Source: Podarcis muralis (taxonomy: Eukaryota). From it: a DNA stretch of 64,000 nt. A program made the position numbers and the translations under genes. The notes under the pieces were generated by a model. It had not been told where the DNA came from. It did not search any database and saw only the letters and a program-made list of their open reading frames with translations. This document shows positions 22,480 to 58,278 of this stretch, piece after piece (the first letter of the stretch is position 1; each line of letters starts with the position of its first letter). The DNA lies in NCBI RefSeq assembly GCF_964188315.1, contig NC_135667.1:12462001-12526000 (forward strand), in the 5' to 3' direction.

Positions 22480-23437
22480 TCATCCTTTCTTCTTCCAAGA
22501 CACTCTTTGTAGCAATTTGGCCACTGCCCCATGGACATCCTTGTTCCTCAAGGTATAAATGATAGGGTTGAGAAGTGGGGTGACCACAATGTAGAAAAAA
22601 GCAATTTTCTTGTCACTGTCTGGAGTTGTCCCCGACCTGGGTCTCATATACATAGAAATAACAGTGCCGTAGAACAAGGTGACCACTGCCAGGTGGGAAG
22701 CACATGTAGAGAAAGCTTTGCTCCGACCTGCAGCTGACTTCATTTGTAACACAGAAGACAGAATGAGTCCGTAAGAGGTCAGGATAACAGAAAGGGGCAC
22801 TAGAAGGATAATCACAGCTGCTCCAAAAACGACAGCCTCCGTAACACGGGTGTCAGCACATGCAAGTTTCAACACTACTGGCATCTCGCAAAAGAAGTGG
22901 TTAATGAGGTTGGGGCCACAGAAGGGGAAGCGAAGAGTGCAGGCCACATTCATCAGGGAGAGCAGGAAGCCGCCTGCCCAGGAGCCTGAGGAAAGCTGCA
23001 ACTGGTGCCACTTATCCATGGCAACAGCGTAGACCAAGGGCTGGCAGATGGCCACATAGCGGTCATAAGCCATGGCACCAAGCAGAAGAGCTTCGGTGCT
23101 CCCCAGGGACAGCCCAAGGTACATCTGGGTCACACAACGGGCAAAGGAGATAGCTCCATTCCCAGACAAGAGATGAGCCAACATCTGGGGCACAGTGCAG
23201 GTGACATAACATATCTCCAGGCCAGAGAGTTGAGTCAGGAAGAAGTACATAGGTGTATGGAGGCGGGGGTCGGCCAGCACCAGCATGATGATAACCAGGT
23301 TCCCCAAAAAGGTAAATGAGTAGAATATGAGGATGACCACAAAGAGGAGAATCTGTGTCTTGCGGTGGTTGGAGAGCCCCACCAAGATGAACTCTGTGAC
23401 GGAGGTGATGTTCTCAAATTCCATTCTAGCCTCCTCC
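22480..23437 (-). CDS. OR-1 class II olfactory receptor, main exon (classical ATG 23424, 314 aa)
   Basis: [52 protein letters not shown]; acceptor tctctacag|G at 23437. Confidence 0.96.
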
Positions 23438-24740
23438 CTGTAGAGAAAGGACAAATGTAAGAGACCGGGCACAATGGGACAACCATAAACTATCATCTCT
23501 CCCACAAAGCAGAAGGAAGGTTCTAATATGTTTTTAAACAATATGTTTTATCATTGATGATCTGTAATGTGTTTTTAATGTTGTACACTGCCTTGGGATC
23601 CTTGGGATAAAGGGTGGTATATAATTTGAAACTGAAATAACAACATAGCAGGTGAATGCTCTTAGTTGTGAGGACCACCCCCTATTTGACTCTCAAATAT
23701 TCTTAGGTATTATTCTTTTGCATGATGATTTAGATAGTTTAAGCTCTGTGCACCAAGGTACCATGTAATACAATTTGGACCATGATGCTGATTATGTGAA
23801 GAGAAAGATTTAGACTGCAATCCCAACCCCACTTACCTTGGAGTAATTCCCACTTTATTCTATAGAGCTTGCATCTGAGTAGGCATGGCTAGCATTGCTC
23901 CTTTTATTACATTTCAGGTAAACAAAAATACATAATGACAAACAAGACACCTATAAGAAAACTTGACTGTACACTTAGTTCCAGCACTGCTTCTAAATGC
24001 ACATGAAGAATGGGGAAAATATTGAAGATAAAGAAACAGCAATATGGAAAGGTCAACAAAGATAATGTATAGATTTTAAGTTACAGACCAAAAATGTTTA
24101 GATACAATACCAGTCCATAATGGACAGTGGAGATCTGGAGGAAGGACTGCTAACCTGTTTTCGCAGGAACCCCCCCCCCCCCTGAAAAATGGAAACTAAG
24201 CAACTGGGAATTGTTTTAGATTTAACCCCTCTCAGCTGCCTGTTATGTTCAATGGCACAGAGTGCATTTATCAGCTTCAGCTGGTGGCCCAGCTGTGTCC
24301 CTATCTGGGATAGGCGATAGCCTAACTTCTACCATCTATGCTCTGGTAACCTCTAGTTTAGATTACTGCAACAGGTTATATGTGGGGCTGCCTCTGAATA
24401 TGGGTTAGAAACCTCAGATGGTGCAGAATTCAGCAGCCAGTGCTCACATGGGCAAGACTTATTCAGCATATAATGCTAATGCAAACATGTGTCCTTTTGG
24501 GGGTGGTGTATTTCCCCTCTTTTTTTCCACTGTGAGGTATGAGCAGCCACTTAACAGTTTCTGTTTGGGGGGCCCTCCAGATTTGGGTAATCCAATTCCT
24601 GTTTTCATCTGTCCCTGGTTTCTTCCGTTCTAAAGCTGAAATCGTATACACAGGGAATAAATCTGACTGAACTCTGTGGTGCTTATCTTAGAGTCGATCT
24701 TGCTCTTCATAGCCTACTCATTCATATATATGTATATGAT

Positions 24741-24788
24741 GTGTGTGTGTGTGTGTGTGTGCGCGCGCACACACACACACACACACAC
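24741..24788. repeat. Perfect 48-bp palindrome (GT)10(GC)4(AC)10
   Basis: Read directly from the sequence. Confidence 0.95.
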
Positions 24789-55230: not shown

Positions 55231-56179
55231 CTACTCAAAGCTCCATCTTCCCAGCACCTTGGCTGCTGCCCCATGAACGTCCTTATTCCGCAGAGTATAA
55301 ATGATGGGGTTGAGCAATGGAGTGACCACAACATAAAAGACTGCAATTTGCTTGTCCCGGTCAGGAGCTGACCCTGACTGGGGGATCATGTACATAGACA
55401 TGACAGTGCCATAGAACAAGGTGACCACCACCAGGTGAGAGGCGCAGGTGGAGAAGGCCTTGTGCCGTCGGGCAGTTGACTGCATTCGCAACACTGAGGA
55501 GAGAATGAGTCCATAAGACGTTAGGATAACAGAAACGGGAATTAGCAGGGCCAGCACAGATGCAACAAAAAGAATGGCTTGTGTAATGTGTGTGTCGGCA
55601 CATGCAAGTTTCAGCACCACGGGCAGCTCACAGAAGAAGTGGTTGATGCGGTTTGGACCGCAAAAGGGGAGCCTGAAGGTGCAGGCCACGTTTATCGAAC
55701 CCAGGAGGAAGCCACCCATCCAGCAGACTAAGGCGAGCTGCAATTGACGCCACCTGCCCATGGCAGTAGTGTACAGCAGGGGGTGGCAGATGGCCAGGTA
55801 GCGGTCATAGGCCATGGCAGCTAGGAGAAGGCATTCCGTGCCGCCCATGCCCAGTGCAATGTACATCTGGATAGCACAATGGGCAAAGGAGATGGTCCCA
55901 TTGCCAGAAAGGAGGTGAGCTAACATTTGAGGCAAGGTGCTGGTGACGTAACAGATCTCCAGGCCCGAAAGGTTTGTCAGGAAGAAGTACATGGGCGTGT
56001 GGAGGGAAGAGTCAGCCCACACAAGCATAATGATCACTAGGTTCCCCATAATGGTGAGGGAGTAGATGATGAGGATGACCACAAAGAGTAGAATCTGTGT
56101 CTTGCAGTGACTGGTTAGTCCAACCAAGATGAACTCTGTGATAGTGGTGAGGTTCGCCAACCCCATCCCAGTCTCCTGC
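55231..56179 (-). CDS. OR-6 class II olfactory receptor main exon (classical ATG 56166, 311 aa)
   Basis: ctcttcag|[68 protein letters not shown]. Confidence 0.96.
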
Positions 56180-58234
56180 CTGAAGAGAAAGAGCAACATT
56201 GAGAAACCAATGATGTTCTCTGGGAATGGGACAACCTTAAAAACAGGTGATGTTTCACTTCCTGCAACACTAGGACAAATCCCAAACCAATCAACTTTGC
56301 ACAATCATCTCAGCAGCAAGATACTGATGGACTACAACTCCCAACACCCCTGACCATTTGCTAGGCTGGCTGGAACTACAACTTCTGGAAGGTTTTATCT
56401 CAAAGCACATAAGCCCTGCTTATTTCAATTGTTCCATTTATAACCTGCCTTTCTTCCATTATTCAGCCCAAGGTGATGGAACATGGTTCCCATGTGATCA
56501 CTCATGCAGGCACAGGCCTGACCCAGACCTTCTTGGCTTCAGCAAGGTAGTGGTCTAGTCTGCCTGCAGACCCTACAAGCCATGGCTAGAGAGAGTCAAC
56601 AGCTCCATCTGCTTCTCACCTTACAAGCCAAGAAGCAGAAAATGGCAAGGAAACTGCCTTTGCCACGTTTACTTCAATAATATGCAATTCTTAAACCAGG
56701 ATTGGGGAACCTCCAGCAGCAAGAGACCCCATGACAAACAGGGCTATTTCTGGTTGCTTTTGTTAAGTATAGTTGTTTAACTGATGCTGAAATGGGAATG
56801 CCTATGTGTGTGTAAACAAAGGTTTAACATGGAGAATGGTGAGATGTGTATTGCTAACATTGTGGTTTTTCCACAGTAGTTTTCTAAGTGGTCTCTGAAT
56901 TTCTTAATTGGTTGATAATTAACTGTTGGTTGTTCTCTTAAACTGAATGCAACCTTTGATCATGTGATGAGGCTATTGAGTTGCCAAATCACCATCTTGG
57001 AAGGGTGGTGGCCGGATTCTTTGCTCTCCAAGGGCACACAGTCTTGGGGGCTGGAATGCAGGCCATGAAGCCTGTGTGTGAGAAACAGAGCTGTGTTTGT
57101 CAGCTTTGATTATAAGTTTGCTTAATTTCTAAGATGCTGAGCCTGTGCTGGACAGCACAAGATATTGTATGGATACTGTGGAGGTATCATTTATGCTTTT
57201 GTTCTGTTTTTGAAGAATGTTCTGCAAGTAAACTTTGAATAATATTTTAATGGGTCTCGACAATGTTTCATTCCAAAAGAACCCAATTTTTTATGCATCC
57301 AGTTGTTTCAAACTGCACAGCATTAATATCTGCAATAGTTCTGCCCAGGTTTCTAAGCTGTGGTAGGAAGCCATTTAAACCAGTTTTGGCATTGTCTCTC
57401 CAGAAGCGTCTCAGGAGCAAATGTTTTGAGCAAAAAGGAAATGAACTTTAACAGGACTCCCTGTTCATAGCAACTGTTGAATGGACAGGTGTGTGCACAG
57501 CATGAGATATAAGGATTTAACCCACCAGAGAAGGTGACAATGGCTGGGTTGAAAAGAGGTGCTGAGGGACATGACAGAAGACCTGAAATCTATAGAATAA
57601 AATATTGCCTTTATAAAAAACAACCCAAAACCCCAATGAGGCAACTTGTCAACTTGGACAGGATACCAAGCAGGTTTAGCTACACAATATATATTTAAGA
57701 TCTACACTGAAACTAAATATTGCAGTTATGCCAATAGGAGTTTCTTTTCTCTTCTCCACACTCTCCCACATCACAAGCAGCACTGTGTACAGCCAGGTTT
57801 TACTGTAGGCCAGGTGCGGGGAGCCTTTGGTCCTCCAGACCTTGCTGAACTACAACTCCTTGGCCATTGACCATGCATATTGAGGCTGATGGACTTTGAA
57901 ATTCAACATTTAGAGGGTCAAATCCCTGCTGTAGACCAACAGAACTGGTCTTCCCTAAGCTTCCCTGGGGAGGATTAGATACAGTACATCAGGCAAGAAA
58001 CTAGTAACAAATTAAAAGGAAAGAGGCAGAATTGCTGATATTCTCCACATGTGACCAAATATGTTAAAATCTGTAACTTTTCAAAATAGCAAATGTCCAC
58101 AATGTCAGTGACTGGAAGGTGAGGATGAACACAATTCAGAGAACTATGAATTTTGAAGGAAATTGGTTTGGGAAGTGCAAATTGGGTGGATTAGAGCTCC
58201 TGTCTAACACCCTTATTACAGAATATCATCTTAC

Positions 58235-58278
58235 CTTCGTGCCTCTCCAAAATGTTCCTGCTTGATTGTTTCCTGCAT
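58235..58278 (-). CDS. Predicted OR-6 upstream coding mini-exon (MQETIKQEHFGEAR-R)
   Basis: GCCATG start context; 14 codons plus 2 nt; donor AAG|GTAAGATGATATTCTGTAA; in frame with the acceptor at 56179. Confidence 0.65.

What the first reader, a model, noticed from the sequence alone, without database searches (positions are those of the whole stretch)
23437..58278. Cluster-wide two-exon OR architecture: ATG-bearing upstream mini-exons with a shared donor motif splice in frame into the OR coding exon
Seen: five ORs (OR-1, 3, 4, 5, 6) have a pyrimidine-tract/YAG acceptor exactly 13 nt before the classical start. The intervening 1+12 nt is always open and similar in protein (EEAR, EEVR, KEMR, EKVR, QETG), so an upstream exon ending in phase 2 would be read through. 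Four of these genes have, 0.9-2.7 kb upstream, the same donor-plus-intron motif: GTAAGATTATATTCTGCAATTGG (G at 26106), GTAAGATCGTGTTCTTCAATTTGG (39922), GTAAGATCATATTCTTCAACTTGG (52487), GTAAGATGATATTCTGTAATAAGG (58234). In all four, the nearest ATG before the donor is in the phase-2 frame with no stop, giving MK-EEAR-M, MDNYLGVAEKQQREEQW-EEVR-I, MKNSFEVAEEQQSEVQR-EKVR-M and MQETIKQEHFGEARR-QETG-M. OR-3 and OR-5 are duplicates, so there are about three independent cases (naive chance about 1/27). Known: vertebrate OR coding regions are classically intronless, but split-coding ORs have been curated in human and mouse (Barnes et al. 2020, BMC Genomics). I know of no description in squamates. Inference: these lizard ORs carry a hydrophilic, Glu/Gln-rich 6-21 aa N-terminal extension that single-exon annotation misses. 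It might act as a natural trafficking tag, by analogy with the rhodopsin tag used to express ORs.
Basis: partly seen in the sequence, partly recalled or inferred. Interest (0 to 1): 0.85.

Follow-up and report, generated by a model that had tools for sequence, protein, structure and literature searches.

The report
Two-exon coding olfactory receptors in lizards
Four of the seven smell-receptor genes in this wall-lizard cluster can start translation in a tiny upstream exon shared by lizards from geckos to lacertids, a gene layout already known in mammals and already present in some automatic lizard annotations.

Summary
OR1, OR3, OR4, OR5 and OR6 have a pyrimidine-tract/YAG acceptor 13 nt before the classical start. 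OR1, OR3, OR5 and OR6 have an upstream exon ending in GTAAGAT whose nearest ATG reads in frame, without a stop, into the receptor.

These are not independent coincidences. All are copies of one ancestral first exon, which I also found in geckos, a skink, an anguid, an amphisbaenian and an iguanian.

OR3 is the strongest case. Its classical ATG is lost in four lacertid species (ATA or ACA), yet the receptor body is under purifying selection (dN/dS 0.30). Only the mini-exon ATG can start it.

The pattern is not cluster-wide. OR4 has the same exon without an in-frame ATG, and no such exon was found for OR2 or OR7.

The peptide sequence itself is weakly constrained (pN/pS about 0.55), so the "trafficking tag" idea has no support.

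RefSeq and Ensembl already carry such split models for OR3 and OR5 relatives. The window genome's own annotation truncates OR3 to 300 aa.

The RNA runs I could reach had no reads on the OR3 mini-exon or junction, so splicing and the transcription start remain inferred.

A first-reader note from this scan (s1-188867, unchecked) reports similar exons in another OR cluster of this genome.

The parts
22480..23437 (-). OR1 exon 2. The acceptor AG ends at 23438, the classical ATG is at 23424-23422 and the stop at 22482-22480.
   Evidence: Pfam 7tm_4 E=3.8e-54
26107..26111 (-). OR1 mini-exon coding part, ATGAA (phase 2). The donor GTAAGATTATATTCTGCAATTGG starts at 26106.
   Evidence: It is homologous to the ATGAAG|GT exons of Sphaerodactylus, Tiliqua, Elgaria and Sceloporus.
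38070..39027 (-). OR3 exon 2. The classical start codon is ATA (39014-39012).
   Evidence: dN/dS against the Zootoca orthologue is 0.295, Fisher p=1.6e-4.
39923..39972 (-). OR3 mini-exon coding part, 50 nt, encoding MDNYLGVAEKQQREEQ plus the first two bases (TG) of a Trp codon. The donor G is at 39922.
   Evidence: The RefSeq P. muralis protein XP_028560523.1 (P0004) has the identical N-terminus.
43965..44922 (-). OR4 exon 2. The first ATG (44915) lies inside the 13 nt that follow the acceptor.
46479..46580 (-). OR4 first exon, homologous but non-coding. The donor GTCAGATAATATTGAG starts at 46478. The ancestral ATG is now AAG, and only a 2-codon uORF remains. The upstream end of this exon is approximate.
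   Evidence: nhmmer E=6e-15. It is conserved in P. raffonei and Zootoca. Frame analysis.
50419..51388 (-). OR5 exon 2. The classical ATG is at 51375-51373.
52488..52588 (-). OR5 mini-exon. It has in-frame ATGs at 52537 (50 nt before the donor) and 52588 (101 nt before it). The donor G is at 52487.
   Evidence: The Ensembl P. muralis model A0A670J8Z0 (P0129, 356 aa) starts at the -101 ATG and uses this junction.
55231..56179 (-). OR6 exon 2. The classical ATG is at 56166-56164.
58235..58278 (-). OR6 mini-exon coding part, 44 nt, encoding MQETIKQEHFGEAR plus the first two bases (AG) of the next Arg codon. The donor G is at 58234.
   Evidence: The P. raffonei orthologue keeps the ATG, the length and the open frame.

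Best explanation
The window is a tandem cluster of class II (OR2D/2G-like) olfactory receptor genes, apparently from Podarcis muralis. These genes inherited a two-exon structure from an ancestor older than the gecko-lacertid split.

Structure:
- A short first exon ends in a strong donor, AAG|GTAAGA, followed by about 25 conserved intron bases.
- An intron of 0.4-3.7 kb follows.
- An acceptor (Y)nCAG lies 13 nt before the classical ATG.

The ancestral first exon carried an ATG in good Kozak context (ccagtgacATGg) 50 nt before the donor. That ATG was in frame with the receptor, so genes had two in-frame starts.

Different lineages then lost one or the other:
- OR3 lost the classical ATG. So did genes in Eublepharis and Sphaerodactylus, shown at the DNA level, and by protein model alone one in Euleptes. 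These now depend on the exon-1 ATG.
- OR4, a Rhineura gene and an Elgaria gene lost the exon-1 ATG. Their first exon then drifted out of frame.
- OR5 and OR6 keep both starts.
- In the OR1 lineage a C-to-T change made a new ATG at the very end of the exon (MK type).

By the scanning model, transcripts that include the upstream ATG should mostly produce receptors with 6-21 (OR5 possibly 38) extra hydrophilic residues on the extracellular N-terminus.

Shown here: the sequence features, the homology, the frames, the loss of the classical ATG, and purifying selection on OR3. Inferred: that the splice is used, that transcription starts upstream of the ATG, and that translation starts there. The extension seems constrained only to stay open and in frame. 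It shows no sign of carrying a specific function.
For: 1. The donor and acceptor are conserved across 14 first-exon copies from Lacertidae, Gekkota (3 genera), Scincidae, Anguidae, Amphisbaenia and Iguania. GT is present in 14/14 copies, and positions +3 to +5 match in 13/14.
2. The same ATG context and the same 50-nt distance occur in Podarcis OR3 and Heteronotia. ATG-to-donor distances with an open frame are 50, 50, 44, 47 and 38 nt, all equal to 2 mod 3.
3. An Eublepharis neighbour that was not chosen through its annotation is in frame after separate 3-nt and 12-nt deletions.
4. Copies without the ATG measure 49 and 45 nt.
5. OR3 orthologues in P. muralis, P. raffonei, Lacerta agilis and Zootoca have I, I, I and T at the classical start, and all give intact 335-aa proteins.
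6. The OR3 body has dN/dS 0.295, from 22 synonymous and 21 non-synonymous changes, p=1.6e-4.
7. The only other candidate start, an internal Met, is Val in Lacerta.
8. New out-of-frame ATGs appear in P. raffonei OR5 and Zootoca OR3 only downstream of the in-frame ATG. That position is harmless if translation has already begun.
9. RefSeq and Ensembl models use exactly these junctions.
Against: - There is no transcript evidence. Three RNA contig sets and one raw RNA run had no reads on the OR3 mini-exon or junction. They covered only a repeat in the intron and 220 nt of coding sequence. The tissues are unknown and probably not olfactory.
- The transcription start is unknown. TATA-like boxes 8-16 nt before the OR5 and OR6 ATGs could place it downstream of the ATG.
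- The extension shows no clear amino-acid constraint.
- The Sceloporus relative of OR1 (81% identical to it) has four upstream ATGs that are out of frame with the 13-nt acceptor. Three of them are in frame only with an AG 4 nt further on.
- The Tiliqua model also needs that alternative AG.
- One Elgaria copy has ATG followed directly by TGA.
- Most gecko and skink examples were found through annotations that require an open frame, so they are a biased sample.
- The gene ranges on record start exactly at the ATG, so I cannot tell whether the public models rest on RNA data.
Confidence: 0.7

Rival explanations
1. The first exon is an ordinary non-coding 5' UTR exon. Its in-frame ATGs are tolerated relics, because in-frame upstream ATGs do less harm than out-of-frame ones, or they lie upstream of the real transcription start. 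OR1, OR5 and OR6 are translated from the classical ATG only. OR3 would be an exception or a dying gene.
For: - In-frame upstream ATGs occur in 13.6% of human and 21.5% of mouse ORs without being treated as coding (PMC7055050).
- The peptide is weakly constrained, and its divergence is close to intron divergence.
- OR4, the Rhineura gene and one Elgaria gene work with a non-coding version of the same exon.
- Sceloporus tolerates out-of-frame upstream ATGs.
- TATA-like boxes lie close to the ATGs in OR5 and OR6.
- No RNA evidence was obtained.
Against: - OR3 has lacked the classical ATG since before the Podarcis/Lacerta/Zootoca split, yet it stays intact in four species with dN/dS 0.30.
- The classical ATG is also lost, with the exon-1 frame intact, in Eublepharis and Sphaerodactylus at the DNA level.
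- The upstream ATGs sit in good Kozak context, with A or G at -3. If they are transcribed, they should be used.
Confidence: 0.22
2. The conserved block is a core promoter, with O/E-like, homeodomain-like and TATA-like elements, and not an exon end. The GTAAG would be part of that promoter, and transcription would start downstream of it.
For: - An O/E-like site (ACCCCTGGGA or ACCCCAGGGA) lies 21 nt before the 'donor' in Sphaerodactylus and Elgaria copies.
- The following bases contain GATTA- and TATAT-like motifs.
- Conservation runs about 25 nt beyond a normal donor consensus.
Against: - The best-conserved positions are exactly the splice consensus, AAG|GTAAGA.
- No other conserved donor exists that could feed the conserved acceptor.
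- This reading does not explain the in-frame ATGs, the 3n length changes, or the survival of OR3 without its classical ATG.
- RefSeq and Ensembl models splice at this site.
Confidence: 0.05
3. The arrangement is a chance coincidence of ATG, frame and GT in the upstream DNA.
For: Short open frames are easy to find. Four codons without a stop after the acceptor are expected about 83% of the time.
Against: - The motif occurs 4 times against 0.05 expected.
- Homologous exons occur in nine other squamate loci, from eight other species.
Confidence: 0.01

Closest known systems
Mammalian 'split' olfactory receptor genes (Barnes et al. 2020, BMC Genomics 21:196, PMC7055050)
   Same: The start codon lies in an upstream exon, and the intron falls within the N-terminal tail. 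Barnes' class 1 covers loci taken for pseudogenes because the classical ATG is missing, which matches OR3. Class 2 covers genes with both an extended and a single-exon reading, which matches OR5 and OR6. Intron sizes are similar (0.9-2.7 kb here; 0.55-22.6 kb in mouse).
   Different: These are squamate genes. One ancestral coding first exon is shared by a whole subfamily across squamates, whereas Barnes reports 23 independent events in mouse. A conserved intron motif follows the donor here, while Barnes found no distinctive intron features. No RNA-seq support could be obtained here.
Ordinary OR 5' UTR exons with in-frame upstream ATGs (13.6% of human and 21.5% of mouse ORs; PMC7055050)
   Same: There is a short non-coding first exon, an acceptor a few nucleotides before the ATG, and an upstream ATG in frame. 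OR4's exon is exactly this kind without the ATG.
   Different: Here the ATG and the frame are retained across deep lineages, and the ATG has become the only start in OR3 and in several gecko genes.
RefSeq and Ensembl automatic models: XP_028560523.1 (P. muralis), XP_033024149.1 (L. agilis), XP_034992739.1 (Z. vivipara), XP_053216219.1 (P. raffonei), A0A670J8Z0_PODMU
   Different: The models are inconsistent across species and releases. OR5 is 318 aa in RefSeq, 356 aa in Ensembl and 339 aa (intron read-through) in P. raffonei. OR3 is 300 aa in the window genome's own annotation. I found no publication describing any of this.
Multi-exon OR genes of cichlid fishes (Azzouzi et al. 2014, BMC Genomics 15:586; seen only as reference 92 of PMC10869828)
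   Same: [quoted passage not shown]
   Different: I did not read that paper, so the position and origin of its introns were not compared.

Membership tests
Vertebrate olfactory receptors (Pfam 7tm_4, rhodopsin-type GPCR) | Full-length match to the 7tm_4 / 7tm_1 profiles and an intact ORF of about 310-320 aa | tested here: met
   OR1, OR3, OR5 and OR6 match 7tm_4 with E=1e-49 to 4e-54 over profile positions 3-277/278. The closest proteins are squamate 'OR2D2/2D3/2G3-like'.
Split OR genes in the sense of Barnes et al. 2020 | Intact ORF across two exons joined by canonical GT-AG sites | tested here: met
   The GTAAGA donors and (Y)nCAG/TAG acceptors give stop-free reading frames in OR1, OR3, OR5 and OR6.
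Split OR genes in the sense of Barnes et al. 2020 | Start methionine and splice junction conserved in orthologues of other species | tested here: met
   OR3: conserved in Zootoca at the DNA level, and in Lacerta and P. raffonei at the protein level. OR5: conserved in P. raffonei and Zootoca. OR6: conserved in P. raffonei. The deeper paralogue in Heteronotia has the same ATG context and the same distance to the donor. OR1 orthologues were not available as DNA.
Split OR genes in the sense of Barnes et al. 2020 | No conserved downstream methionine that would give a full-length single-exon ORF (their stringency filter) | tested here: inconclusive
   The filter is met for OR3, whose classical codon is ATA or ACA and whose internal Met is Val in Lacerta. 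It is not met for OR1, OR5 and OR6, which keep the classical ATG. Barnes et al. would have excluded those three.
Split OR genes in the sense of Barnes et al. 2020 | RNA-seq reads supporting the exon junction and expression at protein-coding level | tested here: inconclusive
   In four runs, no reads or contigs fell on the OR3 mini-exon or junction. The tissues are unknown, so the absence says nothing either way.
N-terminal trafficking tag (analogy with the Rho tag) | A sequence-specific element that improves surface expression, expected to be conserved at the protein level | tested here: not met
   The extension has pN/pS about 0.55. Its non-synonymous divergence of 0.072 is similar to the intron divergence of 0.077. 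Surface expression itself cannot be tested with these tools.

The most novel reading that the evidence does not exclude
A whole squamate OR subfamily has kept a coding first exon for roughly 200 million years as a redundant second start codon. This would let genes lose the classical ATG without dying, so single-exon pipelines would systematically miscount functional ORs as pseudogenes or truncated genes. The roughly 25-nt conserved intron motif next to the donor, and the O/E-like site inside the exon, could then be part of the promoter-proximal machinery of receptor choice. That would tie transcription control, splicing and start-codon choice into one compact module.
Probability: 0.25. Interest if true: 0.6.

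Novelty: new member of a known kind. Interest (0 to 1): 0.42.

Why it matters
OR repertoires in reptiles are counted with single-exon pipelines (for example PMC10869828). A gene such as OR3 is then scored as truncated or as a pseudogene, although it is conserved and under selection. The window genome's own annotation cuts it to 300 aa and removes the N-glycosylation site.

Recognising the shared first exon would correct gene counts and start codons. It would also give the right N-termini for expression studies. It extends the mammalian 'split OR' finding to squamates, with a single ancient origin instead of many independent events.

The practical effect on receptor function is probably small, because the extension looks nearly neutral.

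Tried and rejected
1. RNA evidence. Two run searches found no RNA run holding OR3 or OR5 transcripts. The small shares that were reported turned out to come from a high-copy repeat in the OR3 intron (39380-39750). The single read-laying run gave no junction.
2. The look-up of encoding contigs had no record for P0004 or P0057.
3. A search restricted to the N-terminal 40 residues of P0004 returned only its own cluster and one chimeric model, so it did not find transcript-derived proteins.
4. No homologous first exon was found for OR2, OR7, the first Elgaria gene or the first Ahaetulla gene, even with nhmmer --max. One weak candidate (E=1.4) lies upstream of the second Ahaetulla gene and has no ATG.
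5. A candidate donor at 47036 upstream of OR4 (GTAAGATTGTC, phase 1) was dropped. The profile search and the orthologues point to 46478 instead.
6. I looked for an OR7 mini-exon using the Hemicordylus N-terminus and found nothing.
7. A test of whether indels are multiples of three across all lineages was abandoned. It is circular once lineages are classed by open frame, and 4 of 8 events overall is not significant.
8. Scanning for promoter motifs did not fix the transcription start.
9. Two literature searches for a description in squamates found nothing relevant.

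
Full report
**What the window holds.** Seven intact OR reading frames lie on the minus strand:
- OR1: 22480-23541
- OR2: 30473-31519
- OR3: 38070-39089
- OR4: 43965-44915
- OR5: 50419-51474
- OR6: 55231-56304
- OR7: 60959-62119

Two V2R seven-transmembrane exons lie on the plus strand. OR1, OR3, OR5 and OR6 match Pfam 7tm_4 at E=1e-49 to 4e-54. The nearest database proteins are squamate 'OR2D2/2D3/2G3-like' receptors.

Proteins identical to the window's products sit on a 59,601,746-bp contig, the same length as one that carries a protein named Podarcis muralis. 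The window is therefore most likely P. muralis. It is a different individual or assembly from the one behind XP_028560523.1, which differs from the window's OR3 at 5 residues.

**The observation.**
- Five genes have a (Y)nYAG acceptor exactly 13 nt before the classical start.
- Four have an upstream GTAAGAT donor.
- The pattern GTAAGATNRTRTTCT occurs 4 times in the window against 0.05 expected from shuffles.
- In each of the four, the nearest upstream ATG reads without a stop across the junction into the receptor frame.
- OR3's classical codon is ATA.

**The four exons are homologous.** They are not independent cases.
- blastn links OR3 and OR5 over about 300 bp, and OR1 and OR6 around the donor.
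- An alignment and an nhmmer profile join all four. They also pick up a fifth copy upstream of OR4, with donor GTCAGAT at 46478.
- The OR4 copy is conserved in the P. raffonei and Zootoca orthologues. It has AAG where the others have the ATG, measures 49 nt instead of 50, has an in-frame TGA, and carries only a 2-codon uORF. It is a non-coding version of the same exon.
- No copy was found for OR2 or OR7. OR2's pyrimidine tract has been replaced by a CCAT microsatellite.

**Depth of conservation.** I fetched ten loci from other squamates. The same exon, donor and acceptor are present in nine of them: Heteronotia, Sphaerodactylus and Eublepharis (geckos), Tiliqua (skink), Elgaria (anguid), Rhineura (amphisbaenian), Sceloporus (iguanian), and the lacertids P. 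raffonei and Zootoca.

Across 14 copies the consensus is GGAACCCCTGGGAGAAGCACAAAG|GTAAGATTATATTCTGCAATTTGG. The splice-consensus positions are the most invariant, with GT in 14/14 copies. Podarcis OR3 and Heteronotia share the context ccagtgacATG at exactly 50 nt from the donor.

Where the ATG is kept and the frame is open, the ATG-to-donor distances are all equal to 2 mod 3:
- 50 nt in OR3, OR5 and Heteronotia
- 44 nt in OR6
- 47 nt in one Eublepharis gene
- 38 nt in another Eublepharis gene

The 47-nt Eublepharis gene was not chosen through its annotation. Its acceptor has moved from 13 nt to 1 nt before the ATG, so two separate deletions (3 and 12 nt) both preserved the frame. Where the ATG is gone, the distances are 49 nt (OR4) and 45 nt (Rhineura).

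**The MK type (OR1).** In Tiliqua, one Elgaria copy, Sceloporus and Sphaerodactylus, the exon ends ...GCATGAAG|GT. In the Tiliqua and Elgaria copies, which keep the old ATG 50 nt upstream, the TGA inside that sequence stops the old frame. The same sequence carries a new ATG in phase 0. Three routes then bring this ATG into frame:
- Podarcis OR1 has one base fewer (ATGAA|GT, phase 2) and the 13-nt acceptor.
- Sphaerodactylus has phase 0 and 12 nt after the acceptor.
- The Tiliqua RefSeq model uses an AG 4 nt downstream.

These cases were found because they are in frame, so I give them little weight. In Sceloporus, the OR1-like relative not chosen for an annotated extension (81% identical to OR1), the upstream ATGs are out of frame with the 13-nt acceptor. 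Three of the four are in frame only with the AG 4 nt downstream. OR1 is therefore the weakest of the four claims.

**Why the upstream ATG is probably a real start.** OR3 is the key case.
- RefSeq has 335-aa split models for its orthologues in P. muralis, P. raffonei, Lacerta agilis and Zootoca. The classical start position is I, I, I and T. At the DNA level it is ATA in the window and ACA in Zootoca. The ATG was therefore lost before these genera split.
- The body of the gene remains intact in all four species. Between Podarcis and Zootoca it has dS 0.10 and dN/dS 0.295, from 22 synonymous and 21 non-synonymous changes. Fisher's test gives p=1.6e-4. The values for OR4 and OR5 are 0.20 and 0.16.
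- A gene under selection needs a start codon. The window genome's own 300-aa model uses an internal Met (P0122, identical to the window from residue 19). That start would remove the N-glycosylation site, and the residue is Val in Lacerta. This leaves the mini-exon ATG, which is intact, 50 nt long and open in all four species.
- The same loss of the classical ATG with an open exon-1 frame is seen in Eublepharis (GTA) and Sphaerodactylus (GAT) at the DNA level. It is also seen in Euleptes and a second Sphaerodactylus gene at the protein level. Those examples come from annotation and are a biased sample.
- New out-of-frame ATGs have arisen in P. raffonei OR5 (13 nt before the donor) and Zootoca OR3 (3 nt before it). 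Both lie downstream of the in-frame ATG. They are harmless inside a coding region but costly in a 5' UTR.
- All four window ATGs have A or G at position -3.

**What is not shown.** I could not obtain transcript evidence.
- The run searches found no RNA data set holding OR3 or OR5 transcripts.
- Laying three RNA contig sets and one raw RNA run on 36500-40500 gave no reads on the mini-exon or the junction. It gave only a high-copy repeat in the intron and one 220-nt contig on the coding sequence. The tissues are unknown, so this neither supports nor refutes the claim.
- The transcription start is unknown. A conserved TCACTGA block lies 130-154 nt before the donor. TATA-like boxes lie only 8-16 nt before the OR5 and OR6 ATGs, which could place the start too far downstream.
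- The Ensembl OR5 model begins at the ATG 101 nt before the donor. That suggests a longer exon, but I could not inspect its evidence.

**Constraint on the peptide.** Over three independent orthologue pairs, the extension has 11 non-synonymous and 4 synonymous changes, giving pN/pS about 0.55. Its non-synonymous divergence is 0.072, close to the intron divergence of 0.077 for OR5 between Podarcis and Zootoca. The dN of the receptor bodies is 0.014-0.03. The sequence is therefore nearly free to change; what persists is the ATG, the frame and a hydrophilic character. The 13 nt after the acceptor are 77-92% purine. That is typical of splicing-enhancer and Kozak sequence, and it would by itself yield Glu/Lys/Arg codons. 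The 'trafficking tag' idea has no support here.

**Comparison with what is known.** The arrangement matches the mammalian split ORs of Barnes et al. (PMC7055050). OR3 corresponds to their class of supposed pseudogenes rescued by an upstream ATG. OR5 and OR6 correspond to genes with two possible N-termini, which those authors deliberately excluded when a conserved downstream Met existed. They also report in-frame upstream ATGs in 13.6% of human and 21.5% of mouse ORs, so such ATGs are common.

Two things differ here. A single ancient origin is shared by a subfamily across squamates, and a conserved motif follows the donor. I found no paper describing this in squamates. Automatic annotations already contain several of these models, but inconsistently. 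A first-reader note from this scan reports ATG AAG|GT exons in another OR cluster of the same genome (s1-188867, unchecked).

**Verdict.**
- The claims that the pattern is cluster-wide, that the cases are independent and that it is absent from the databases are overstated, and the tag function has no support.
- This is a new member of a known kind. Its main use is to improve annotation and OR gene counts in reptiles.

Noticed in passing
window 26080-26106, 39895-39922, 52460-52487, 58208-58234 (minus strand); also L001, L002, L004, L005, L007-L009: About 25 nt of intron directly after the donor are conserved from geckos to lacertids (consensus GTAAGATTATATTCTGCAATTTGG). This goes well beyond a splice-site consensus, and its function is unknown.
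   Followed up: partly
L002 about 2986-2995; L005 about 14507-14516 and 19636-19645: An O/E (EBF)-like site, ACCCCTGGGA or ACCCCAGGGA, lies inside the first exon 21 nt before the donor in Sphaerodactylus and Elgaria. It is degenerate in Podarcis OR3 and OR5.
   Followed up: partly
window about 52623 and about 58386 (minus strand), and the matching places in L001, L005 and L006: A conserved TCACTGA block lies 130-154 nt before the donor in OR5, OR6, Heteronotia, Elgaria and Rhineura. It may be a promoter element.
   Followed up: no
window 31430-31500: OR2's polypyrimidine tract is replaced by a (CCAT)n microsatellite, and the AG is 14 nt before the ATG. No homologous first exon was found between OR3 and OR2.
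   Followed up: partly
window 39380-39750: A high-copy repeat in the OR3 intron is covered at depths of thousands in RNA contig sets, including one (X2) from another species. It explains the small 'shares' reported by the run search.
   Followed up: partly
P0031 (Ensembl P. muralis A0A670JAD5): This is a chimeric model that joins the OR3 N-terminal part to the OR2 body. It may reflect read-through or inter-gene splicing between neighbouring ORs.
   Followed up: no
L003 about 8930 (P. raffonei OR5) and L004 about 14758 (Zootoca OR3): New out-of-frame ATGs lie 13 nt and 3 nt before the donor. Both are downstream of the in-frame ATG.
   Followed up: yes
L003 10001-11020 (P. raffonei XP_053217445.1, P0002): The RefSeq model of the OR5 orthologue starts at an ATG inside the intron and reads through the acceptor (MCNTWLALDSLLPFLCR...). 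This is a third, inconsistent annotation of the same gene.
   Followed up: yes
window 61915-61935 (OR7) and L008 about 2340: OR7's acceptor CTCTTTAG lies 1 nt before its ATG, as in an Eublepharis paralogue. A Hemicordylus OR7-like model (P0006) has Ile at the classical start and an upstream extension. OR7's own upstream exon was not found within the window.
   Followed up: partly
window 5364-6239 and 19445-20386 (plus strand): There are two V2R-type seven-transmembrane exons next to the OR cluster. V2R genes also flank the Sceloporus OR in L009.
   Followed up: no
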